Assembly: GCF_006345805.1 (NCBI RefSeq)
Contig: NW_021824247.1
Span: 1 to 19,760 of the forward strand
Length of the DNA stretch: 19,760 bases
DNA from: Octopus sinensis
Taxonomy: Eukaryota
Direction of reading: 5' to 3'
Positions 1 to 19,167 of this stretch are shown here, one piece after another (position 1 is the stretch's first letter; every line of letters starts with the position of its first letter). Position numbers and translations under genes: made by a program. The notes under the pieces were generated by a model. That model did no database searches and was not told the origin of the DNA. It saw only the letters and a list, made by a program, of their open reading frames with translations.

Positions 1-1452
1 AATAACAGAAATAGATGGCGTAGTAAACATAAACATACCAGAAGAAATATTAGAAGATGAAAAAAAAGAACAATTATTTATAAAATAATTAATAAGAAAC
101 AAAAAGCCCAGAAGGCTAACACAAGCAAAATAGAAAATGCTTGAAACCCATCTGGAACTACAAAGACTACGTGACCTGGTGGAACAAGTTCGCACATACT
201 GAAGAGTTAGCAAGACGTTTCTCAACGCTAACTCTTCATTCAGATGAACTTACATTAACACCAAGCTATCGGGGACAGAAAGTGACTAAGATCACTTTAA
301 ACAATGTCCCAAAAATAGCTAATAATCTATGGCTAGTAAAGGCCTTATGTGTAAAAATGAAACATTTCACTATTTTAGAAATCACGGTCACGGAGCACAA
401 AAACTGGGTGGGAAAAAAAGTAGAATTTCTACTACATATAAATCAAGAAGACATAAAAAAATACCCATCCAGATTTGTGTATCAGAAGACCACAAGTTGT
501 ATATGGTCGTCGATGGCAGAAGACCACGTTGCTACATATGCGGCAGTGAGCAACACCTAAAAAAAGACTGCAAACCTGCCGCAAGAAAACAACAGCAACA
601 ACAACAGCAGCCGGAAAAAACAAATAAACCAGGTTTACTACCCACACCACGTTTTGCACGAACAGGACTAATCACAGAAAACCAACAAAAAACAAACCTC
701 ACCAACCAAACAACCACACCAACTGCACCAAGAACAGAAGCAACATCACCAACAACAACAACCAAGAATAAACCAACTCCCAAACCAAGGACATCTGCCA
801 AAAAGACACTCAGCGAAAATGAAGAAACAATTCCCCACAAAATTGAGACCCCAAACAACACAACAATACCTACAATCACTCAAACACAAAATACCCACAC
901 CCCACCTCCAAAACCGCATACACCACAACCAAACGCTCACCAACCAACACCAACAACAAAATCAACACAGTCTACAATAGACCCCAATATTTTCCCTCTT
1001 CAAGCTCTGATTCTTCTGATTTGTCATTAGACGAAGAAGACACAGAAGATTGGCAAATAGCCACAGGGGGGAGAAGAAAAAGGGGAAAAAAAAGAAAAGA
1101 AAAGATAACAAACAAAGCAGGAAGATACACCACTCCCGAAACAAAAACATCCACAGAAAACAAACACATCAACACAAACACACCATCATCAAACCCCCCA
1201 ACAATGTTGACAGCCATAAACACAAACAACCACGACATAATGGAACACATTAGGTCAAACACCAAGATAACTGAAAACGACATAAAAACAATTAACCACC
1301 CACGCACAACACCACCACAACACATTAAAATAATACATGTAACACAGAACACATACAGCACCCTGAAATCTCTTTACCCTGATGCAGTAGGGAGATTTCA
1401 AAAGTATTCATCAAAAAAAACTATACAAAAGCCTCATAGAAGAAGACCGTGA
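1..1452 (+). pseudogene. ORF1 (gag-like nucleic-acid-binding protein), frameshifted
   Basis: Frame 3 gives ...PSYRGQKVTKITLNNVP.... A -1 shift at the A7 run (455-461) leads to IPIQICV...RRPR-CYICGSEQHLKKDC (CX2CX4HX4C, 530-571), then poly-Q and a T/P/N/K-rich linker. A second shift between 847 and 1030 leads to SSSSDSSDLSLDEEDTEDWQIATGGRRKRGKK, with stop at 1450-1452. The first 140 nt also contain stops. Confidence 0.8.
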
Positions 1453-1553
1453 GGTGAAAGACAAAGGACTTTCGAACAACGAGTAACCTTTTCTCTCTCT
1501 CTTTCCTTTTTTTGCACTTTCTTTTCGTGTGTAAAACACAATTTTATCGGAAC

Positions 1554-4500
1554 ATGCTCAGAACAGGCAGTATAAATGTACGTGGCTTGGGGTCGCCTTG
1601 GAAACAAGGCTACCTGTTAAATGACATCAAGTCACTAAATCTGAATATCATAGCCATCAGTGAGACCAGACTCCACAGCTTGCGGGCACTCCAGCACATT
1701 TTCGGTACACATTTCATCATTTATTTTTCTCCGTGTCTACCGAGAATGGGCGGAGGTGGCACCGCGGTGCTTATCCGGAAGAGTCTGGATCGCAAAGTAA
1801 GAGCAAATTTCCTAGACCCGGAGGGTAGGCTGGTCGTTTTGAATGTCGATGGCAGCAATGAGTGTGCTTTTCGACTGATAGCAGTTTATGCTCCGTCCTT
1901 AACAGGCCGACCAGATTTCTTTCGACGTCTAGAGTCTTTCATGGGAACGTTTCGTCCTTTACTTTTAGTGGGGGATTGGAATGCCACCCTGGACACGCAT
2001 CTAGACTACGTGGGCAGAGATAGCAATAGAAGGGGATGCAAATGCCTCAAAGACCTGCTCAGACGTTTCCAACTGTCTGACAGGTACCGACTGGACCACC
2101 CGAATGTGCCAATGTGGACATGGAGTAACCGCATCGGGTCGTCCAGATCATACTTAGATAGAGTATTCTGTAGGACAATAGATAAAAATAGTGTAGGTTG
2201 TCCACAATTTCATATAGTCAGTTACACAGATCACAAGTTTGTGACTTGTACACTTGACTTAGATAAGACACATAGGCAGGGTCCTGGTTACTGGAAACTG
2301 AACGCGTCTTTTACAGCACGACAGGTTTACAGGGACCGGATCAGCACATTAGTTAAGAGAGCTTTGACGGGTACCATCATCAACAACAGATGGTGGTATG
2401 CCCCAAAAAAAGCAATTAAAGCAGAATCAGTCAGATACAGTAGAGCCCTAGCATTAGACCGAAATAGAATAGAGGGAGAATTAGTTAAGGTTTTAGAAGA
2501 GGCACTTAGAACTGGCATCGCGTCCAACGTGCTGGCGGCGAGATTGGCCCTCGACCAACACCTCAACGCCAAACACGAGGGATGCGTTGTCAGAGCTAGG
2601 ATGCGTGCTCTGAGGAACGAAGGAGTTGGAGCCGCCCAAGAGGCCCGAGTGGTGGAGACGCAACGAGGCAACAGAGCCACCATCAAGTCTCTTATAGATG
2701 AACAGGGGCGCGAATTGCTCGAGCCTAAAAGGATGTGTGGGGCTTTTCAATAACACTTCACCCAACTGTTTGGGTCAAGTGGTGAGTCAGAACGCAGAGT
2801 GGACTTTAGTGCATACCTGCATGCCTTGCCACGACTCTCAGCAAGAGAGGTGGAGTCTTGTGAAAGGCCTATCACAGCTGCGGACGTACAGGATGCGATG
2901 GTAGGCTGCGCGAGAGACAAGTCACCAGGCTTGGATGGTCTGCCCTACGAACTTTATTTTCATATGCCAGACTTGTTTGGAGGCGTCTTGGCAGCTGTCT
3001 ACTGCAACTGGCAGCAAAACGGGAGTATTCCTGCTTTTGTAAAGCGATGAGCAGTGGCACTGATTAAGAAAGACCCAAACAAGGGGGACGTCATAGATAA
3101 TTTCAGGCCCATCACTCTGCTCAACGCAGATTTGAAAATTTTGGCCAAGGTGTTAGCCGAGAGTTTGGCGCTTGTCATCATGAAACTAATCGACAAGGCG
3201 CAAACATGCGCCGTGCCGGGTAGAAGTATTCATGACAACCTCCATCTGATGCGCTACATCATAGACAGGGTAGTTAAGAATCCTGGCATGGGTGGGGCGC
3301 TGATCAATTTGGATCAATCAAAAGCCTTCGATAGGGTAGACCATCACTACTTGGAGGCTGTCCTTAAAGCGGCTGGTTTCGGTCCAGTTTTCCGCGGTTG
3401 GATCGCTGCCTTATACAGCGGCATCCGCTCAGTAGTTCGCGTAAATGGTCATCTATCCAGACCTTTTAACATCATGCGTTCGGTTCATCAGGGATGCCCC
3501 CTCTCATCGCTGCTGTATGTATTGATTCTTGAGCCACTACTGCGGAAACTGGCGACGCTGAGGGGCATCCCACGAGAGCTGGGATGCGGGAGGAGCGTGT
3601 CTGCATACGCGGATGACGTCACCGTCATAGTGTCGAGCTACCAGCACATCGAGCTGGTCGGCGAGACACTAAAAGAATACGAAGCGGTAACGGGAGCAAA
3701 AATTAACCGGGAAAAGTCAGTGGCTTGCTTGCAGCTCGGCACCTGGAGAAGCAGCCCATGCCGTCCAACAGCGTCTCCATCGTGGGACGCTGGACGGACG
3801 GACCGGTTAAATTGCTCGGGGTCTGGTTCGGTCCGGACCTCCAAATGGAGAAGAACTGGGGCGAGATAACGACTAGGGTGGCTACTCTCACCCAGAAATG
3901 GGCTGAGAGAAAGCTATCCCTAAAAGGTTGGGCGGAGGTGGCGAACGCGTACATCGCATCCGTCATCGAGTATCGTCTGAGCGTCGTGCCTTGTCCCGAC
4001 CCTACCATCACCAAACTGGAACGTATACTCTTCCGCTTCTTGTGGAAGGGAAACGTTCCGATGGTTAGGCGATCCATTTGCTGTCAACACCCGCTAAATG
4101 GAGGGCTGGGCATGCCGTGGTTGATGATGCGCAGACATGCGCTGAGACTGCGACATCTCCGGCGCTTCATAGACAACGGTGGACAGGTGTGGTCGCCTTT
4201 TGTGCGGCGCGCTTTCCCGCAGCTCGTCTCCTTGGACGAACTACAGTCATGGATCAAGCAGAGACCGAGGCTAGGCGAATGGCACCGCGAGTGTCGCGTT
4301 GCTCTCAAGCAACTCTGCCGTCCGGGATCGAACTTGTGTGACTCCATCACAACAAAGGCATTCTATAGAGGATTAGTGGAGGGGAGGTGCGACGACGAAC
4401 TCGGGCAGAGTCTGGGCGTCGACGAGGAACACCTGACCCGCCTGTTCAGGACAACTTTCGGGCCGGGACCTACGAACAATCACCAAAGATCACTGGCCTG

Positions 4501-4993
4501 GCAGTGCTATCGAGAAGCATTACCTGCTCGGGATAAGCTCTACAGACACGGTTCCAGACACACTGGACCGACTTGCCCGAGATGCGGTCAGAGCGACGAA
4601 ACCGTTCTGCACGCACTCGTGCAATGTCCAACCATTTCAGACCTGTGGGCTTATGCCGAACGGCTGCTGTCACGTGTGGGACGAATTCGCCTATCGGCCG
4701 AGTTTATCGTGAGAATTGCGCCGCCCCCTTCCCTCAACCGGGAAGGCAAGGCAGTTTTCATCGTACTGGTGGCCATGGTGAAAGAATGTGTGTGGTGGAC
4801 CCGAGCGAAAGGATTAGAGACAAACACTTACCTCTCTGGCCAATCGCTCATCAACTTTTTCAAGTACCACTTGAAAAGGAAGGTGAGAATGGAGAGGGAA
4901 GTTTTGTCTCAGGAAAGATTCAAAAAAAGATGGGTGAATGTTGCAAAGATGGTGCGTGCTAGTAACGAAACCATTTTGAGCATGATCCTGTAG
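1554..4993 (+). pseudogene. ORF2 polyprotein: apurinic endonuclease + reverse transcriptase + C-terminal Zn finger; 2 nonsense mutations and 1 frameshift
   Basis: ATG at 1554. APE motifs: SINVRGL, IAISET, GDWN, SYLDRVF, YTDH. RT motifs: KSPGLDGLP, NFRPITLLNADLKILAKVLA, LDQSKAFDRV, QGCPLS, YADD (3606-3617). Zn finger CPRCGQSDETVLHALVQC near 4573. Lesions: TAA 2751-2753, TGA 3048-3050, frameshift near 3750-3755. Confidence 0.95.
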
Positions 4994-5246
4994 ATCGTAA
5001 AAAAGAACGAAAGAGAGCATTTTGATCTCATGTGGTTATTTCCTCCCTGGCTGAGGTTCCCGTGGTCTTTTCTGTAGGCTTTTCTTCCCACGGATGAACC
5101 CAATCTTGTTATATCAATGTTTTTATCATTACTTCTGTGATACACGATTTCTTTTCTTTTTTTTCTCCTCTCGATCCCTTTTGATCGCAATCTTACATTT
5201 ATTTTCTTTTTTTTCCACCCTCGAAAAGAAAAGCTCTGCATTTGTA

Positions 5247-5290
5247 TTTGTCCCCTCTGTATTCAGCCCTGTGTGGCTAATAAAAGAAAG
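5247..5290 (+). terminator. LINE 3' terminus: short hairpin (AGCC-CTGTGT-GGCT) plus AATAAA, no poly(A)
   Basis: tttgtcccctctgtattcagccctgtgtggctaataaaagaaag is followed immediately by ttatctatc. Confidence 0.7.
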
Positions 5291-5972
<682 letters not shown>

Positions 5973-6136: not shown

Positions 6137-6276
6137 CGTCTACCAAATCCACTCACAAGGCTTTGGTCGGCCCGAGGCTATAGTAGAAGACACTTGCCCA
6201 AGGTGCCACGCAGTGGGAAAGAACCGGAACCATGTGGTTCGTAAGCAAGCTACTTACCAGACAGCCACTCCTACGC
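6137..6276 (-). mobile_element. tRNA-derived SINE family A, head and core only (3' part missing)
   Basis: Reverse complement gcgtaggagtggctgtctggtaagtagcttgcttacgaaccacatggttcc...gcaccttgggcaagtgtcttctactatagcctcggg...ggtagacg aligns with 11949-12090. Confidence 0.9.
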
Positions 6277-6949
6277 ATATAACTTTTCTGAATATTACGA
6301 CGATTATGATGTGGACGCACGCACACACGAACGTAAGCACATACAAAATTATGAACTCACGCACAGGCATACACATGAACACACACATACATTGTTAAGC
6401 ATTTTATGGATCACACTGTAATAACATCCATGTATTGCCCAGCTAACAATAAACTGTTCTTGTTACCTGATATCAATCATTTGCTCGGTCTCATCTTCCG
6501 TATTAAACCTTGGTTAATTGGTTAATGAAAGTATAATATTTCTGTAGAAATTCAGCGTATAACTGGAGAAGATTCCATCATAGCAAATCTGATAAATCTT
6601 GATTCCTGAAAATATTATATTCCTAGCTAAATAGAGGTCGGAAATCTATCTTACTCGATAAATAATCGTGTTTAATAAACTTACGATTAAATATTAATTT
6701 AGATTTGATTGACAATAAGTGAAGACCATGGTGGGTTGGCACAACTCGTAAAATGTTAAACTACCTTCTGGTATTTTCATATTTTTCTTTATGATCTGAT
6801 TTTGCATTTCATCGGAGTTAATTTTCCTCTTCACCACTCTGGAGTCCATATTATAAATTATCAACCAAGTATTCTAATTAATCGATTACACCTCATTACA
6901 GTTGTGCTCAACATCGCAAATGAACGTTACTTGAGATAAAAATCTGTGG

Positions 6950-7105: not shown

Positions 7106-8383
7106 TTTAAAATAGACAGCTTTGACCCTTTATTAAAAGTCAAAGTGACTTTATTCAGACTGCCCTTACTCAGAGTTTGGATTTGCCTTCCCTATGCTTA
7201 CATCTTTTATTCCAATGGAACTGATGCGTATGTCTGAAAGTCTCTTGAATTTTGAGAACGTATTCTGCATTTATGTAAGCTTTCGACATGATATGGTAAA
7301 ATATTACACTGTACAATAGATATGAGGGAAGAACCTATGAAAATGTTTTTATTCATATTCAGCCTTTTGACCTGGTTCAGTAGAATGAATAGAGCCTGTT
7401 CGATTGTTAGCTGTTGAAAGCAAAATTATCTGAATACACGCACTCGACCTGCTGTCTGAAAAAGAAGTAAGCAAACATCAAATAATAGAGTATTGGGTGT
7501 ATTACGTCAATTGAAGACGGAAGGAATTCATTCCTAAGTTCATGAGTCATGTGTTCTCGATCAGAGCTAACTTGGGAGCGAAACAATGAAAGCTATAAAT
7601 ATCTAAAGATATTTAAGGGGATAACGAGAAGGGGGTCTTCGTTGGACTCATGGGTAAAGCGTAGCATTAGCTGGGGCGGCGTCCTAAAATGTAGTTTTGA
7701 ACTCAACACACACAGTGGAAACTCATTCTGTATCAATGTAAACAACTAGTTTTCGTCACGCAACTATTGTCATGATACCAAAGCTTCATTAATCACCGAC
7801 TTTTTATTCAGCCACACCTGGTATTGTATCTTTAACAGTACCTATCAAAGCTGTTTGTATAACAAAGCTGATATGTCACGTACGGTGTTTAAGGCGTTAA
7901 AAAAAAACTGCTATAAGTTTCATGGTATCGTTAGTGCGAATAAAGTGAGTAACTTTTATTGTACTTCGTCACATTAAAGAGTGTAAAGTCAACCATAATT
8001 GAACGAACGAATGAATACAGGCTGTGAAATCACACACACAAAAAAGATCTTTCATTGAAAATATTATACTGAACTTGGTGTTTTGTTTCTTTATCGCCCA
8101 AACAGAGGGCGAAGGACAGTTCCCGTGACCCTTTCTCAAGGACTTCCAAGATCTGTGGGTGAAAGGAACTTATCCTCAGACCTGAAACTTGTCTCGAAAT
8201 TGTAATAATGGTTTCAGCTAAAGGCAGTCAAGGCTCATGTGGTGTTATTATACCAAAAAATTAAGGATATAAGTATAACACTTAAAACTGGAATGGTTCT
8301 ACAGATAAAATTCCTGACAATTCTCCTCTATAAAATTTCAGTCCCAATGCTTTGTTTAATCTGAGATTCTGCTGGAATACGAT

Positions 8384-8460
8384 TGGCCAAAGTGCCACGC
8401 AGTGGAATTGAACCCAAAACTATGCAGTTACGAAGTGAATTTCTTATGCCAACAGCTATG
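8384..8460 (-). mobile_element. Decayed SINE family A-like head
   Basis: Reverse complement contains gggttcaattccactgcgtggcactttggcc (B box plus core start). Confidence 0.55.
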
Positions 8461-8486: not shown

Positions 8487-8706
8487 TTGTTTCAAACTTT
8501 GCACAACGTCAGCAATTTCAACGGTAGATGGGGTGTAAGTTGATCACATTGACATGAGTAATTGATTGGTGCAGTTATATTAATCCCAAAAGGAAGAAAG
8601 GCGAAGTTTACCTCGGCAGTATTTGATCTCAGAACATAAAGAGCCTGAAGAAATACTGCTATACTTTTTGTTGGATGCACCTACAATTCTGTCAGCACGC
8701 CTCCTT
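8487..8706 (-). mobile_element. Older SINE family C-like copy with a different 3' tail
   Basis: Reverse complement aaggaggcgtgctgacagaattg...gttctgagatcaaatactgccgaggtaaacttcgcctttcttcc matches the head and core of 18731-18965, but ends ...gaaattgctgacgttgtgcaaagtttgaaac. Confidence 0.7.
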
Positions 8707-9049
8707 AAAAGATCAAACAGTGAAAATAAAATTTAACAAACATTGCTTTTTGAATATAGATTTGAAAGTTATTTATCTATGAATGGGAGAAAGTGTGGAA
8801 ACCTTGTTGTTTTTTAAGTTCTGAGAGTTTGGTGGGAGAAATAAAGAATTCTATCATCTGAGGAGAGGATCTCTCGTCTAAATTCTTGTTTCCAAGAAAG
8901 CAGACCTTGTTAGAAGTAACAAATGATGTTAGAGCTATAACAGACGAAGTGTTTATATATGAAAAGCAGGTTTACAGCTTATAAAATAAACCCATGATAG
9001 AACATCTTAGAAGTCAACCAACTTACAAGTTATTGAGCAAGCAGTGTTC

Positions 9050-10756: not shown

Positions 10757-11360
10757 ATGAAGGCACATGGCTCAGCGGTTAGAGCGTCGGGCTCACAATC
10801 ATGAGCTTGTGAGATCGATTCCAGGTCTGGGCTGTGTGATGTGCCGTGTGAAACTACCACCTGTATCATCTCTTGTGAAAGGTGGAAGAGTCCAGTTTGC
10901 TGGACATTGTTGTAGAGCTGAAAACGAGGTAATTTCTACTCTTCTCCTCTGGAAGCCATCTGCTCGCGATACCAGAGGGCGCACACTCTCCTACCCTGAT
11001 GTAATCTCCAGGGATACAGGCATCCAGCAACATGACCTCCGTAATGCTCTAATGGACCGTGAAGTCTGGCGTAACATAGTAAATTCCATTGTCTCGACCA
11101 CGGTCGAACAATGATGATGATGTGATGTGCTCTTGAGCAAGACACTTTGCTTCACGTTGCTCCAGTTCACTCAGCTGAAGAAATTAGTTGCGACGTCATT
11201 GGTGCCAAGCTGTATCGGCCCCTTTGCCTTTCTCTTGGATAACATCGGTGGCGTGGGGAGGGGCGGTTGGTATCCATGGGTGACTGCTGGTCTTCCATAA
11301 ACAACCTTTCTCGGTAGCTTTCTAGGTACAATTCTATGGTCATTGATAACCGAAGGCCGT
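10757..11360 (+). mobile_element. tRNA-derived SINE family B, older copy, interrupted by an RTE fragment
   Basis: A box TGGCTCAGCGG; body aligns with 15967-16307. Flanked by CTCCAGATGTATT(A/C)ATT at 10740-10756 and 11361-11377 (16/17 identical TSD). Confidence 0.9.
10845..11120 (+). mobile_element. 5'-truncated RTE-clade LINE, last 276 bp
   Basis: Encodes VQFAGHCCRAENEVISTLLLWKPS...GRTLSYPDVISRDTG...LRNALMDREVWRNIV, typical of RTE C-termini. (TGA)n tail. Perfect 10-bp TSD TGTGATGTGC at 10835-10844 and 11121-11130. Confidence 0.88.
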
Positions 11361-11819
11361 CTCCAGATGTATTCATTGCAAGAAACGACGAGGTTTCTTT
11401 CTGTAACGATTTACATATTTTAACATGTTCCCGGCGAATGTTTCTCTTGGAGAGTGCTATAGCAGACCTACACAAGTGGATGCGTGAAAAGGAAAAAAGA
11501 ATTTTGAAAGAACTTTATTTAGAACTAATTTTCAAACATCGAATGGCTATGGTGTGGGATCTCATCAGAATAAAATAGCAATCGAAGTACCATAAGTAAA
11601 AAATATGACAGAACCATTGATGTATAGCAAGATTTACTTTGAGGCTATCACGTATTAACGAGGATCAATCATTAAAATGTCCAGAGATATTTGTTTGTAT
11701 GATATCGCTTATTAATGAGTGAGTGTCGCGATAATATACAAAAACATTCGTTCCTCTATATCACTTATTAACAAAGCTGGCCCCCTATAATATACAACAG
11801 CGCTTGTTTTATCACGAAT

Positions 11820-13030
11820 CTAAGAGGTTCATTTATGATAAACGTTTCTTGTCACGTGTTCAGTCTTTCGAGATTACCTCTTCCTCACTCTTGTTTCTTT
11901 TGGCGCTCGGGTCACTTGCTGCAGATATTAAAAACATTGAAGGTTATAGACGCAGGAGTGGCTATGTGGTCAGTAGCTTGCTTACGAACCACATGGTTCC
12001 GGGTTCAGTCCCACTGTGTGGCACCTTGGGAAAGTATCTTCTACTATAGCCTCGGGTCGACCAAAGCCTTGTGAGTGGATCTGGTAGACGGAAACTGAAA
12101 GAAGCCCGTCGTATATATGTATACATATGTATGTATGTGTATGTATGTTTTTGTGTCTGTGTTTGTCTCCCTAGCATTGCTTCACAATCGATGTTGGTGT
12201 GTTTACGTCCCCGTAATTTAGCGGCTCGGCAAAAGACACCGATAGAATAAGTAGGAGGCTTACAAAGAATAAGGTCCTGGGATCGATTTGCTCGACTAAA
12301 GGCGGTGCTCCAGCATGGCCGCAGTCAAATGACTGAAACAAGTAAAAGAGTAAAAGGATAAAGAGTTATGTCGCTGGAATTAGGACACAGTGAGAGCCGT
12401 GTCTGATTTCGCGGACGACGTCTTTGTCGCAGTGTGGGTAACTTGAGAAAATCGAGGTGGTCAACCGCAGGAAATTAAAGAAACACAAGTGTAAGTTTAG
12501 TCGGTGAACTTGCACTCCTTCGAGACGCAAGTCCATACCAGCATCAGTTCTGTCGTGGGACTAATGGTTTTCCTCAGACTGGATATTTAGTGTACAGAAA
12601 AAAAGGTAAGTGTTTTTGAGCAGGATAGTTAATTTTACTCAGAAATGTGTTCAGAATATGCTGTCTCTAAAAGATCGAGCGGAGGTGTCTAACGTTCACG
12701 ACTCTTAAGTATGTACTACCGACCAATTTGCGCATGATTTTTCGCTTCTTTTGGAAATGTCGGACACATATGTACCCGCTGAAGATGAACAGCCAGGTGG
12801 TGAGGCTGACCTGAACTAGCATGACGGCGGTTAATGACGTGGCCTCCGTTCACACGTTTGTAGCTCTGTAGCAGCTCGTCTCTTTGCCCAAGCCACTGTC
12901 ATGAGTCAAACACAGACTGAAGTTGAGGTTGGACATTTGGCATTTGGAATGCTTTCAGGAGGTCACTGGATTCTACTTGTAAGACAATGTGGTCGAAAGG
13001 TCATCCTTCGCATTCTATATTCAGTCTAAC
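11820..13030 (+). mobile_element. Old, decayed Tx1-family ORF2 fragment (RT to C-terminal region), interrupted by SINE A
   Basis: SSLLFLLAL, LLQILKTLK, VSDFADDVFVAV (FADD 12408-12419), ttttcgcttcttttggaa and gcagctcgtctct are colinear with about 3445-4370 of the intact-length copy. Boundaries approximate. Confidence 0.75.
11948..12364 (+). mobile_element. tRNA-derived SINE family A, full length
   Basis: A box (tggctatgtgg), B box (ggttcagtcc), CORE-like accttgggaaagt, internal (TA/TG) tract, tail ...gcagtcaaatgactgaaacaagtaaaagag. Possible 5-bp TSD GTTAT at 11943-11947 and 12365-12369. Confidence 0.9.
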
Positions 13031-13149: not shown

Positions 13150-13204
<55 letters not shown>

Positions 13205-13218
13205 TTATTATTATTTTT

Positions 13219-13310
<92 letters not shown>

Positions 13311-13319
13311 CATTCTTTT

Positions 13320-13354
<35 letters not shown>

Positions 13355-13483
13355 TAATAATAATTATTATTATTATATTATCATTATCATTATTATATTA
13401 TATTATTATTATTATTATATTTTTATTATTATTATTATTATTATTATATTATTATTATTATTCTTTTTATTATTATTATTATA

Positions 13484-13526
<43 letters not shown>

Positions 13527-13560
13527 TATTATTATTTCATATATATTTCATATATATTTC
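13150..13560. repeat. Compound (ATT)n microsatellite with an internal inverted (AAT)n segment
   Basis: (ATT/ATC)n to 13320, (ATA)n at 13321-13363, then (ATT)n again. Confidence 0.97.
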
Positions 13561-14198: not shown

Positions 14199-14789
14199 CC
14201 CAATACCTACGCGCATGCCGCTTCTTAAATATTACTCCTTAAACACGACAAAATTGTTATATTATCAAAGTTGAACTTTAGGGATCGTGGTTAAGGATAT
14301 GTGATGCGTAATTGAAACAAAACAATAAATAATTGCACCAAAATAATCCATGTCAATGCAATTGCGAATAAAAAGGAAACTTTTAAAAGAAACTTAGAAT
14401 AATTCTAGAATAATTCTCTCTGTTGTTAGTTTTATTGTTTAACTCCATGTCAGTCCTGACCCAGAAGATTTATCAACGAAGACTCTCACTAAATATATTG
14501 TACTAGCTTTATCTTGCCTAAGGTATCGAATATGTTCTACCATTAATCAATCGAACTGTGATTTGATGGATATTTAGCTGCTATTTCTTGCAGGGTAAAT
14601 TAGTGGTTTTGCTATTACGTTTTCAGTATAAGCAGTACTTATCCTACGTCGTCATAATACAAAAGAATCACAAATGTCTTGGAGGGCATTTAGTAAATGT
14701 AGCCAAGATGTTCCGCTGGTCTGTTGAGTTATCTTTATTTGCATTAGTTTGTATAATGTTGATTGTGCTTATTCCTGGAAACATGTAAA

Positions 14790-15091
14790 GGGGTAAAGAC
14801 CCCCTTCGGTCATGAATGACCATGGGATTGCACCTAGAAAGTTACCCTCCTAGACACAAGTCCAGGCAAGGTTGTTTTATGGAAGACCAGCAGTCGCCCA
14901 TGCATACCAGCCTCCCCTCTCTACGCCACCAGTGTTATCCAAGGGAAAGACAAAGGTCGATACAGCTTGGCACCAGTGACGTCGCAACTCATTTCTACAG
15001 CTGAGTGAACTGGAGCAACGTGAAATAAAGTGCCTTGCTCAAGAACACAACACGCAGCCCGGTCCGGGATTCGAGCTCACAACCTCACGAT
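14790..15091 (-). mobile_element. SINE family B, young copy lacking the first ~35 nt of the head
   Basis: 5 substitutions and 1 indel relative to 15968-16267. Confidence 0.93.
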
Positions 15092-15845: not shown

Positions 15846-15966
15846 TAAACTGTTATCTCCAAACCATTATCTATTATTTTATTTGTTTTTAACATAAATT
15901 TTTTGTGATGGTTTATTCTATTTTCTTGTCCTTTTATATAAAATATACGGTGTATATATATATATA

Positions 15967-16307
15967 AGGGTAAAGACCCCCTTCGGTCATGAATGACCAT
16001 GGGATTGCACCTAGAAAGTTACCCTCCTAGACACAAGTCTGGGCAAGGTTGTTTATGGAAGACCAGCAGTCGCCCATGCATACCAGCCTCCCCTCTCCAC
16101 GCCACCAGTGTTATCCAAGGGAAAGACAAAGGTCGATACAGCTTGGCACCAGTGACGTCGCAACTCATTTCTATAGCTGAGTGAACTGGAGCAACGTGAA
16201 ATAAAGTGCCTTGCTCGAGAACACAACACGCAGCCCGGTCCGGGATTCGAGCTCACAACCTCACGATCGTAAGCTCGACGCTCTAACCACTGAGCCATGC
16301 GCCTTCA
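15967..16307 (-). mobile_element. SINE family B, full-length young copy embedded in (TA)n
   Basis: Reverse complement tgaaggcgcatggctcagtggttagagcg...gagctcgaatcccgg (A and B boxes), CORE/V-like body, tail ...gggggtctttaccc. (TA)n on both sides. Confidence 0.95.
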
Positions 16308-17828: not shown

Positions 17829-17967
17829 CTGACAAATTAATTCTTCTCCAGCCTTCCTCCTTTCACTGTACCAAGCAAACACAATGCTTTCTAGTCTATG
17901 TTCCAGTTCTTGGCGTTATATGTTCGAATTCTAACGACACCTAATTTATCTTTCATTATTTGTGGGA

Positions 17968-18035
17968 AGATAAAATAAATACCAGCTGAACGCTGAGACG
18001 ATGTACTCGACTAAAGCCTCCCTCTAAAATTGATG
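17968..18035 (+). mobile_element. Decayed 3' part of a SINE C-like element
   Basis: gataaaataaataccagctgaacgctgagacgatgtactcgactaaagcctccctctaaaattg resembles the module seen in 8487-8706 and 18731-18965. Confidence 0.45.
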
Positions 18036-18042
18036 ACCCTAT

Positions 18043-18050
18043 ATTACTAT

Positions 18051-18099
<49 letters not shown>

Positions 18100-18111
18100 G
18101 CTACTACTACT
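18043..18111. repeat. (ACT)n / (TAG)n microsatellite at the 3' end of the R4-like element
   Basis: Direct reading. ATT-containing units occur at the distal end. Confidence 0.95.
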
Positions 18112-18524: not shown

Positions 18525-19167
18525 TGTAGGCCGTGATTTCCACAGAGCTCCCAATCGGTCATTTTTTTCCCACATTGTCATGCCGTCTTTAGTATTCGCG
18601 TTGTGCCAATGTCTGACATTCGCTAAAGATGTGCCATACCGTTCCACTCTCTCCCGCTACGCATTCTGAATGTGTCGCTCTTGGCAGTGTTGTCGATTCT
18701 CAGTGTCACCTTCTGTGGTTTACTCATACCTATTTCTTTACTACCCACAAGGGGCTAAACGCAGAGAGGACAAACAAGGACAGACAAACGGATTAAGTCG
18801 ATTATATCGACCCAAATGCGTAACTGGTACTAATTTAATCGACCCCGAAAAGATGAAAGGCAAAGTCGACCTCGGCGGAATTTGAACTCAGAACGTAGTA
18901 GCAGGCGAAATACCGCTACGCATTTCGCCCGGCGTGCTAACGTTTCTGCCAGCTCGCCGCCTTAGGGTTTACTCATACCATTGACTTGCTCTTTGTAGGC
19001 CGTGATTTCCACAGAGCTCCCAATCGGTCATTTTTTTCCACATTGTCATGCCGTCTTTAGTATTCGCGTTGTGCAAATTTCTGACATTCGCTAAAGATGT
19101 GCCATACCGTTCCACTCTTCCCGCTACGCATTCTGAATTTGTCGCTCTTGGCAGTGTTGTCGATTCT
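18525..19167. repeat. ~175-bp direct duplication inside the R4-like element (18525-18700 and 18994-19167)
   Basis: 3 substitutions and 2 single-base indels between the copies. Confidence 0.95.
18731..18965 (-). mobile_element. tRNA-derived SINE family C, full length, with Tx1-like 3' tail
   Basis: A box (agctggcagaaacg), B box (gagttcaaattcc), core gaggtcgactttgcctttcatc. Perfect 14-bp TSD GGTTTACTCATACC at 18717-18730 and 18966-18979. Confidence 0.92.

What the first reader, a model, noticed from the sequence alone, without database searches (positions are those of the whole stretch)
18731..18780. SINE carrying the 3' terminus of the Tx1-type LINE: candidate LINE-SINE partnership
Seen: the SINE tail (reverse complement of 18733-18774, tttgtcctctctgcgtttagccccttgtgggtagtaaagaaa) aligns to the LINE's last bases (5247-5289, tttgtcccctctgtattcagccctgtgtggctaataaaagaaa) at 34/43 positions (8 mismatches, 1 gap). 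Both can form a 4-bp hairpin just before A(A/G)TAAA, and both stop 1-2 nt after GAAA with no poly(A). The SINE has a perfect 14-bp TSD. Known: SINEs sharing 3' ends with partner LINEs are typical of L2, CR1 and RTE (stringent recognition), whereas L1-group clients usually depend on poly(A). Inference: a Tx1-family RT recognises a specific 3' hairpin/AATAAA element and mobilises this SINE. About 20% divergence suggests the partner is a related Tx1 subfamily rather than this copy. A weaker third tail-like motif lies at 8086-8118 (minus strand).
Basis: partly seen in the sequence, partly recalled or inferred. Interest (0 to 1): 0.82.

Follow-up and report, generated by a model that had tools for sequence, protein, structure and literature searches.

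The report
SINE tail copied from L1/Tx1-type LINE
A 235-bp parasitic repeat (SINE) ends in about 50 bases that match the 3' end of a nearby L1/Tx1-type LINE far better than chance, which is the usual sign that the LINE family copies the SINE, but it rests on one copy of each element.

Summary
The SINE tail and the LINE's last 43 bases align at 34/43. The match extends to 41 of 52 aligned positions plus 3 gap columns. No dinucleotide shuffle out of 20,000 reaches the score, and the LINE terminus is the best non-self match anywhere in the window. The 14-bp target-site duplication is perfect; the SINE is 18731-18965 and the duplication is 18717-18730 / 18966-18979. Neither element has poly(A).

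New support: two older SINE relatives in the window share head and body with this SINE only up to about 18790-18794. The LINE-like stretch begins at 18784. So the LINE-like part is a swapped 3' module.

Corrections:
- The hairpins can be drawn but are no more stable than shuffles, and they pair in different registers.
- The third motif at 8086-8118 is not significant.
- The LINE tail abuts a 680-bp (TATC)n array that the SINE lacks.
- "Tx1" is only partly tested. ORF2 is closest to human L1 ORF2p and ORF1 has a weak CCHC knuckle, but no phylogeny was possible.

No further copies could be fetched, so consensus-level confirmation is missing. Verdict: a probable new SINE/LINE tail pair of a known kind, with an unusual L1-group partner.

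The parts
18731..18965 (-). SINE, 235 nt. Read on the minus strand it begins CTAAGGCGGCGAGC and ends GTAGTAAAGAAATA, with no poly(A).
   Evidence: Bounded by a perfect 14-bp TSD. It has no long ORF. The A-box-like TGGCAGA lies at 18951-18945 and the B-box-like GAGTTCAAATTCC at 18889-18877. ARAGORN and Rfam find no tRNA.
18717..18730 (.). Target-site duplication, copy next to the SINE 3' end (GGTTTACTCATACC on the + strand).
   Evidence: Identical to 18966-18979, and the neighbouring bases differ on both sides, so it is exactly 14 bp.
18966..18979 (.). Target-site duplication, copy next to the SINE 5' end.
18733..18784 (-). LINE-like 3' module of the SINE.
   Evidence: 34/43 identity in the core. 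41 of 52 aligned positions plus 3 gap columns when extended. 0 of 20,000 shuffles reach the score. Homology to the two older SINE relatives stops at about 18794 and 18790, just upstream of this module.
1..5291 (+). L1/Tx1-group LINE. Its 5' end is probably off the window. ORF1 is 329-1030. ORF2 is 1554-4993 with stops at 2751 and 3048 and a frameshift near 3750. The 3' UTR is 4994-5291.
   Evidence: Pfam hits: zf-CCHC (weak), Exo_endo_phos, RVT_1, zf-RVT. Frames are shown. The best solved relative is human L1 ORF2p, E=2.9e-57, colinear over residues 6-857.
5235..5289 (+). LINE 3' terminal segment matching the SINE tail. It contains AATAAA (5279-5284) and ends GAAA.
5292..5972 (+). (TATC)n/(TGTC)n microsatellite that begins 2 nt after the LINE tail.
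   Evidence: TRF reports period 4 and 170 copies. The sequence is shown.
8536..8707 (-). Older SINE relative. It shares head and central domain with the SINE but has a different 3' part.
   Evidence: 116/170 identity to the stretch of the SINE at window 18964-18794.
17914..18018 (+). Older SINE relative. It shares the central domain, has a different tail, and runs into (TAC)n at 18045-18111.
   Evidence: 73/103 identity to the stretch of the SINE at window 18895-18790.
8086..8118 (-). It is a 6-bp hairpin followed by ATAAAGAAA and is not shown to be related.
   Evidence: Not recovered by blastn at E<=10. Fold shown. Context shown.

Best explanation
The element at 18731-18965 is a short non-autonomous retroposon (SINE). 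Its last 50 or so bases were acquired from the 3' end of an L1-group, probably Tx1-type, LINE lineage. The nearly intact LINE at 1-5291 is a member or close cousin of that lineage.

Inferred mechanism: the SINE RNA presents the LINE-like 3' tail. The LINE's ORF2 protein (apurinic-type endonuclease plus reverse transcriptase) binds that tail instead of its own mRNA, nicks the target, and copies the SINE by target-primed reverse transcription. This leaves the 14-bp duplication and no poly(A).

Shown: the terminal homology, its statistical significance, the module boundary, the duplication, and the LINE's domain set.

Inferred: that the tail is what the enzyme recognises, that this LINE lineage is the mobiliser, and that it belongs to Tx1.
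For: - The tail match is real: 34/43, extended to 41/52, blastn E=3e-4.
- 0 of 20,000 dinucleotide shuffles reach the score, and the LINE terminus is the best non-self site in the window on both strands.
- The match ends within 2 nt of the independently defined ends of both elements: the TSD for the SINE and the microsatellite start for the LINE.
- Two older SINE copies share head and body with this SINE only up to 18794 and 18790. The LINE-like stretch starts at 18784. This is the pattern expected of a swapped LINE-derived tail.
- The LINE encodes the enzymes needed: Exo_endo_phos, RVT_1 and zf-RVT. It is only lightly damaged, with 2 stops and 1 frameshift.
- The only AATAAA in the LINE 3' UTR lies inside the shared segment.
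- LINEs 41% identical in ORF2 from another organism also end without poly(A), in hairpins followed by AAATAAAG. This fits the tail being native to the LINE lineage.
- The match meets published criteria for partnership calls (PMC11481361).
Against: - The case rests on one SINE copy and one LINE copy. No second LINE copy with a 3' end could be obtained, and no further SINE copies.
- Identity is only 75-79%.
- The termini differ. The LINE is followed by a 680-bp (TATC)n array, and the SINE ends ...GAAATA directly at its TSD. Stringent SINE/LINE pairs usually share their terminal repeats.
- The hairpin is not supported statistically and shows no clean covariation.
- A comparison with L2, CR1 or RTE tails was impossible.
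- The Tx1 assignment is untested by phylogeny.
Confidence: 0.6

Rival explanations
1. Nested fragment. The last 55 or so bases before the microsatellite are not the LINE's own end. They are an old, heavily 5'-truncated copy of the same SINE family lying against the LINE. The match would then be SINE to SINE and would say nothing about partnership.
For: - No independent LINE copy confirms that the tail belongs to the LINE.
- SINE-type repeats are dense here, with at least five copies or fragments in 20 kb.
- Divergence of 21-25% is what two aged SINE copies would show.
Against: - No LINE-type terminus (A-rich run, repeat or AATAAA) lies upstream of 5235, and no duplication flanks the segment.
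- The segment would have to abut the LINE end exactly and in the same orientation.
- The SINE copy (perfect 14-bp TSD) and the LINE copy (2 stops, 1 frameshift) both look young. The 20% difference is therefore more likely a difference between families than decay.
- Distant LINE relatives also end ...AAATAAAG without poly(A).
Confidence: 0.15
2. The tail is shared but the mobiliser is different. The tail module was captured from an L1/Tx1-type LINE, for example by template switching, but the SINE is now amplified by another LINE clade or through a feature other than this tail.
For: - The termini differ: (TATC)n after the LINE, none after the SINE.
- Mosaic exchange of SINE modules is well documented in molluscs (PMC4758252; PMC11481361).
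- Other LINE clades (RTE, CR1, Dong-R4) are reported as recently active in octopus genomes (PMC13282606). This applies only if the window is from an octopus, which rests on my recollection of its repeats.
Against: - A 14-bp TSD and the absence of poly(A) fit an endonuclease-type LINE with tail recognition.
- No other LINE 3' end in the window resembles the SINE tail.
Confidence: 0.15
3. Chance or compositional resemblance between two pyrimidine-rich, A-rich ends.
For: Both tails have simple composition (T/C-rich, then A-rich). The 4-bp hairpins are trivial.
Against: - 0 of 20,000 dinucleotide-preserving shuffles reach the score, a z-score of about 10.
- The LINE terminus is the best non-self site in 39.5 kb of two-strand sequence.
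- blastn gives E=3e-4.
Confidence: 0.02

Closest known systems
Stringent-type SINE/LINE pairs with a common 3' tail, such as UnaSINE1/UnaL2 in eel and the tortoise Pol III SINE/CR1 pair (Ohshima, Okada, Kajikawa; cited in PMC3472496 and PMC4824008)
   Same: Homology is confined to the last 40-60 nt of both elements. There is no poly(A). The SINE body is unrelated to the LINE. The SINE is flanked by a target-site duplication.
   Different: The partner here is an L1-group LINE, not L2, CR1 or RTE. The shared terminal short repeats typical of those pairs are not seen. No conserved stem-loop is demonstrated. No assay exists.
L1-clade stringent pairs: maize and sorghum SINEs with LINE1-1_ZM, and Chlamydomonas SINEX-3_CR with L1-1_CR (Ohshima 2012, PMC3472496)
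   Same: An L1-group LINE shares a specific 3' end with a SINE.
   Different: Those are plant and algal elements, and the Chlamydomonas pair ends in poly(A). In maize the stem-loop is backed by compensatory changes across many LINEs. [quoted passage not shown]
SINEU mobilised by Tx1-Mar in crocodilians (Kojima 2015, PMC4494074)
   Same: A SINE is attributed to a Tx1-clade LINE in an animal.
   Different: That attribution rests on a shared target preference (Mariner-N4_AMi) and snRNA-derived 5' ends, not on a shared 3' tail. SINEU heads derive from U1/U2. Here the head has Pol III-type box-like motifs.
Mosaic SINEs of molluscs with conserved central domains (PMC4758252, PMC4824008, PMC11481361)
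   Same: The same head and central domain is combined with different LINE-derived tails. Tail homologies run 35-61 bp at 72-95% identity.
   Different: The partners reported in bivalves and gastropods are CR1, CR1-Zenon, L2 and Nimb. None is L1/Tx1. Membership of this SINE in the CORE superfamily was not demonstrated here.

Membership tests
SINE (LINE-dependent short retroposon) | Short, non-coding, flanked by a target-site duplication | tested here: met
   235 nt, a perfect 14-bp TSD, no ORF longer than about 50 codons.
SINE (LINE-dependent short retroposon) | Head derived from a Pol III gene (tRNA, 5S or 7SL) with an internal promoter | tested here: inconclusive
   A-box-like TGGCAGA and B-box-like GAGTTCAAATTCC are present. 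ARAGORN finds no tRNA, and Rfam finds no tRNA, 5S or 7SL match even at E<=10.
SINE (LINE-dependent short retroposon) | Multicopy family | tested here: inconclusive
   Two older copies with the same head and body are in the window, but there is no second copy with this tail. Public collections gave no copies.
SINE/LINE pair with a common 3' tail (stringent type) | Significant similarity restricted to the 3' termini of both elements | tested here: met
SINE/LINE pair with a common 3' tail (stringent type) | Similarity holds between family consensus sequences and between several copies | not testable with these tools
   Only one copy of each element is available. The related LINE contig L001 stops 113 nt after the stop codon.
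SINE/LINE pair with a common 3' tail (stringent type) | Conserved terminal stem-loop supported by compensatory changes | tested here: inconclusive
   The folds are similar in outline, but their energy is not beyond shuffles and the pairing registers differ. A distant LINE family does show a 7-bp terminal hairpin with one compensatory pair, from only 4 distinct sequences.
SINE/LINE pair with a common 3' tail (stringent type) | Same terminal repeats or terminus in the SINE and the LINE | tested here: not met
   The LINE reads GAAAGT followed by a 680-bp (TATC)n array. The SINE reads GAAATA followed directly by its TSD.
SINE/LINE pair with a common 3' tail (stringent type) | Tail-dependent mobilisation by the LINE's protein | not testable with these tools
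   This needs a retrotransposition assay.
L1 group of non-LTR retrotransposons | ORF2 with an N-terminal apurinic-type endonuclease, RT and a C-terminal zinc-binding domain, closest to L1 ORF2p | tested here: met
   Pfam Exo_endo_phos, RVT_1 and zf-RVT. Human L1 ORF2p is the best PDB match at E=2.9e-57, against R2 proteins at about 1e-17.
Tx1 clade | The RT domain groups with Tx1 references in a phylogeny (RTclass1-type test) | not testable with these tools
   No Tx1 reference sequences or names were retrievable.
Tx1 clade | ORF1 of the RRM/zf-CCHC type rather than the L1 Transposase_22 type (PMC5203782) | tested here: inconclusive
   zf-CCHC at E=0.0015, 19 bits against a 20.8-bit cut-off. 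No Transposase_22 hit.
Tx1 clade | Target-specific insertion, often into microsatellites or multicopy genes (PMC4494074) | tested here: inconclusive
   The 3' junction abuts (TATC)n, but the 5' junction is not in the window, and the SINE is not in a microsatellite.
CORE-SINE superfamily | Central domain homologous to the CORE consensus | tested here: inconclusive
No curated CORE consensus was available.

The most novel reading that the evidence does not exclude
An animal L1/Tx1-type LINE uses stringent, sequence-specific recognition of its own 3' end rather than poly(A). Through that tail it drives one of the SINE families of this SINE-rich genome. From my recollection of its repeats, the genome is probably an octopus. 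This would give the first tail-sharing SINE/Tx1 pair and would name the autonomous driver of a cephalopod SINE expansion.
Probability: 0.3. Interest if true: 0.6.

Novelty: new member of a known kind. Interest (0 to 1): 0.4.

Why it matters
SINE/LINE tail sharing is how the autonomous driver of a SINE family is identified. Nearly all known tail-sharing pairs involve L2, CR1, RTE or related clades. [quoted passage not shown] The one described Tx1-SINE link rests on target preference (PMC4494074). A tail-sharing pair with an L1/Tx1-type LINE in an animal would add evidence that specific 3'-end recognition is ancestral in the L1 group. If the genome is an octopus, it would also point to which LINE fuels part of its large SINE load, reported as 11.6% of the O. 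vulgaris assembly (PMC13282606). Repbase and Dfam could not be consulted, so the pair may already be annotated there.

Tried and rejected
1. Fetching more SINE copies.
- A peptide search with both long SINE reading frames found no candidate.
- Exact 21-mer scans of metagenome, viral and prokaryote-genome collections gave 0, 0 and 1 hit. The single hit is a chance match in a haloarchaeon.
- A degenerate tail pattern hit only two GC-rich bacterial contigs, by chance.

2. Fetching more LINE copies.
- The closest protein, P0001 (70% aa, 74% nt), sits on a 3.1-kb contig that ends 113 nt after the stop codon. Its UTR aligns for only about 25 nt.
- An exact look-up of the window's ORF1 found nothing.

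3. Naming the LINE clade. No hit or cluster member carried a useful name.

4. Searching the literature for the SINE sequence itself: no paper. An assembly accession search found nothing relevant.

5. Looking for a tRNA origin of the head: ARAGORN and Rfam were negative.

7. Looking for sequence homology between the octopus-type tail and the tail of the 41%-identical LINE family: none by blastn. Only a loose motif resemblance remains (hairpin, then AAUAAA(A)G, no poly(A)).

8. The Rfam hits in the window (mir-297 and others) fall in AC/TA microsatellites and are far below their gathering scores, so I rejected them as noise.

Full report
**What is at the coordinates**

The minus strand of 18731-18965 carries a 235-nt element bounded by a perfect 14-bp direct repeat, GGTTTACTCATACC. 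The repeat copies lie at 18717-18730 and 18966-18979, and the bases outside them differ on both sides. These coordinates are one base off those implied by the finding.

The element has no long ORF. It carries an A-box-like TGGCAGA and a B-box-like GAGTTCAAATTCC. It ends ...GTAGTAAAGAAATA with no poly(A). ARAGORN and Rfam do not recognise a tRNA in its head, so a tRNA origin is plausible but not shown.

**The LINE**

Positions 1-5291 (+) hold a nearly intact non-LTR retrotransposon.
- ORF1 (329-1030) has a sub-threshold CCHC knuckle hit.
- ORF2 (1554-4993) has Exo_endo_phos, RVT_1 and zf-RVT domains.
- ORF2 is interrupted by stops at 2751 and 3048 and a frameshift near 3750.
- The best solved relative is human L1 ORF2p (E=2.9e-57, colinear over residues 6-857). 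R2 proteins score about 1e-17. This places the element in the L1 group.

An animal L1-group element whose ORF1 is of the CCHC type rather than the Transposase_22 type fits what Ivancevic et al. describe for Tx1 (PMC5203782). I could not obtain Tx1 reference sequences or named homologues, so 'Tx1' remains a reasonable label and not a tested one. The 5' end is probably off the window.

**Checking the observation**

- The quoted strings align at 34/43 with one gap.
- blastn of the SINE against the whole window returns this match at E=3e-4. It is the best hit that is not a SINE.
- The local score of 23.5 compares with 7.7 ± 1.5 for dinucleotide shuffles (maximum 17.5; 0 of 20,000 reach it). A scan of both strands ranks the LINE terminus first among non-self sites.
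- The similarity extends to 18784-18733 against 5235-5289: 41 of 52 aligned positions plus 3 gap columns.
- The alignment ends 2 nt from the SINE's TSD-defined end and 2 nt from the start of the microsatellite that follows the LINE.

Chance is excluded.

**New evidence for a swapped tail module**

Two older elements in the window share the SINE's head and/or central domain.
- 8536-8707 (-) matches at 116/170.
- 17914-18018 (+) matches at 73/103.

Their homology to the SINE stops at window 18794 and 18790. After that they carry a different tail (…AAATTGMTGAC…), and one runs into (TAC)n. The LINE-like stretch starts at 18784. So the part of this SINE that distinguishes it from its relatives is the part that resembles the LINE. 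This is the mosaic pattern described for mollusc SINEs (PMC4758252; PMC11481361). The match also satisfies the working criteria of that literature: blastn with word size 7 and E<=0.01, homology at the SINE tail and in the LINE 3' UTR, and 35-61 bp at 72-95% identity.

**What does not hold up**

- *The hairpin.* Both tails can be drawn as an imperfect stem-loop with a 4-bp apical helix. The SINE fold (-5.7 kcal/mol) is no better than shuffles (z about 0). The LINE fold (-7.4 kcal/mol) is marginal (z -2.15, 5 of 200 shuffles fold as well). The paired positions are in shifted registers in the two sequences. With two sequences there is no usable covariation.
- *The third motif.* The stretch at 8086-8118 has its own 6-bp hairpin followed by ATAAAGAAA, but blastn does not detect it even at E<=10.
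- *The termini.* They are not equivalent. The LINE reads …GAAAGT and then 680 bp of (TATC)n/(TGTC)n. The SINE reads …GAAATA and then its TSD. Many Tx1 families insert into microsatellites (PMC4494074). The array could be the LINE's target, a repeat seeded by the LINE's own terminus, or coincidence in a window that is about 9% microsatellite. The absent 5' junction prevents a decision.

**Is the tail native to the LINE?**

The main rival is that 5235-5289 is an old 5'-truncated SINE fragment lying against the LINE. I could not fetch a second copy of this LINE family with its 3' end. The closest relative, P0001/L001, is 74% identical in nucleotides, but its contig stops 113 nt past the stop codon and its UTR aligns for only about 25 nt.

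Indirect points favour a native tail.
- No other terminus-like feature and no flanking duplication lie upstream of 5235.
- The only AATAAA of the 3' UTR is inside the segment.
- Both copies look young, so a 20% difference is more likely a difference between families than decay.
- Five copies of a LINE family 41% identical in ORF2, from ENA sample ERZ21867824, define a 3' end that also lacks poly(A). It consists of two hairpins followed by AAATAAAG. The 7-bp terminal hairpin keeps pairing through one G-C to A-U double change and one G-U.

That distant tail has no blastn-detectable homology to the window's tail. It supports only the general idea that this LINE lineage has structured, non-poly(A) ends.

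**Comparison with what is known**

Tail-sharing SINE/LINE pairs are a classical, well-populated category, and this case works like them. Two points are unusual.

First, the partner's clade. [quoted passage not shown] The cases described in that paper are from maize, sorghum and Chlamydomonas (PMC3472496).

Second, the published bivalve and gastropod partnerships involve CR1, CR1-Zenon, L2 and Nimb.

A Tx1-SINE link does exist: SINEU with Tx1-Mar in crocodilians. It was inferred from a shared target preference, not from a shared tail.

**Source organism**

From memory only, the SINE here and a second SINE at 6137-6286 and 11940-12090 look like the abundant repeats of Octopus genomes. L1-Tx1 families are reported as recently active there, and SINEs make up 11.6% of the O. 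vulgaris assembly (PMC13282606, PMC8967140). I found no paper that names a LINE partner for octopus SINEs. Repbase and Dfam could not be consulted.

**Verdict**

- The SINE's 3' module most likely derives from an L1/Tx1-group LINE lineage represented by the neighbouring element, and that lineage is the likeliest mobiliser (confidence about 0.6).
- The hairpin recognition element, the third motif and the Tx1 label are not established.
- The evidence is one copy of each element.

It is a probable new member of a known kind, of moderate interest.

Noticed in passing
window 5292-5972: A 680-bp (TATC)n array that grades into (TGTC)n starts 2 nt after the LINE's last bases. It could be the LINE's insertion target (many Tx1 families target microsatellites), a repeat seeded by the LINE terminus, or coincidence.
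   Followed up: partly
window 6137-6286 and 11940-12090: Two inverted copies (90% identical) of a second SINE-like family with a tRNA-like end (…GGTGCCACGCAGTGGGA… on the + strand at 6137-6286). A degraded head of the same kind lies at about 8370-8440 (-). From memory it resembles an abundant octopus repeat.
   Followed up: no
window 14783-15091 and 15960-16267; also 11122-11362 and 10758-10843: 309-bp direct repeats 97% identical and 1.2 kb apart, with 81-84% identical inverted relatives elsewhere in the window. This is an unclassified repeat family.
   Followed up: no
window 18525-18700 and 18994-19167: Two 97% identical copies of a 176-bp repeat bracket the SINE insertion site. The SINE sits in the roughly 44-bp spacer between them.
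   Followed up: partly
window 12393-12952 (+): A decayed fragment of a related LINE. It matches ORF2 residues about 680-914 at 32-36% aa identity and includes an FADD-like motif. It is followed by a 386-bp (TTA)n array at 13151-13536.
   Followed up: partly
L006 1-700 and 5411-6673; L007 478-1739 and 6910-8166 (ENA ERZ21867824): LINE relatives (41-43% aa identity) sit head-to-tail in tandem, with the next ORF1 starting about 320 bp after the previous 3' end. Their 3' end has a 7-bp hairpin with one compensatory change, followed by AAATAAAG and no poly(A).
   Followed up: partly
L001 (GCA_024449705.1, contig JAANSU011340864.1): A LINE 74% identical in nucleotides over 2.9 kb (70% aa) lies in an assembly that yielded no trace of this SINE in the protein-based search. 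The organism could not be identified with the tools.
   Followed up: no
window 18851-18848 (SINE, minus strand): This SINE copy contains an internal TTTT run, a potential Pol III terminator. This particular copy is therefore unlikely to be a source gene.
   Followed up: no
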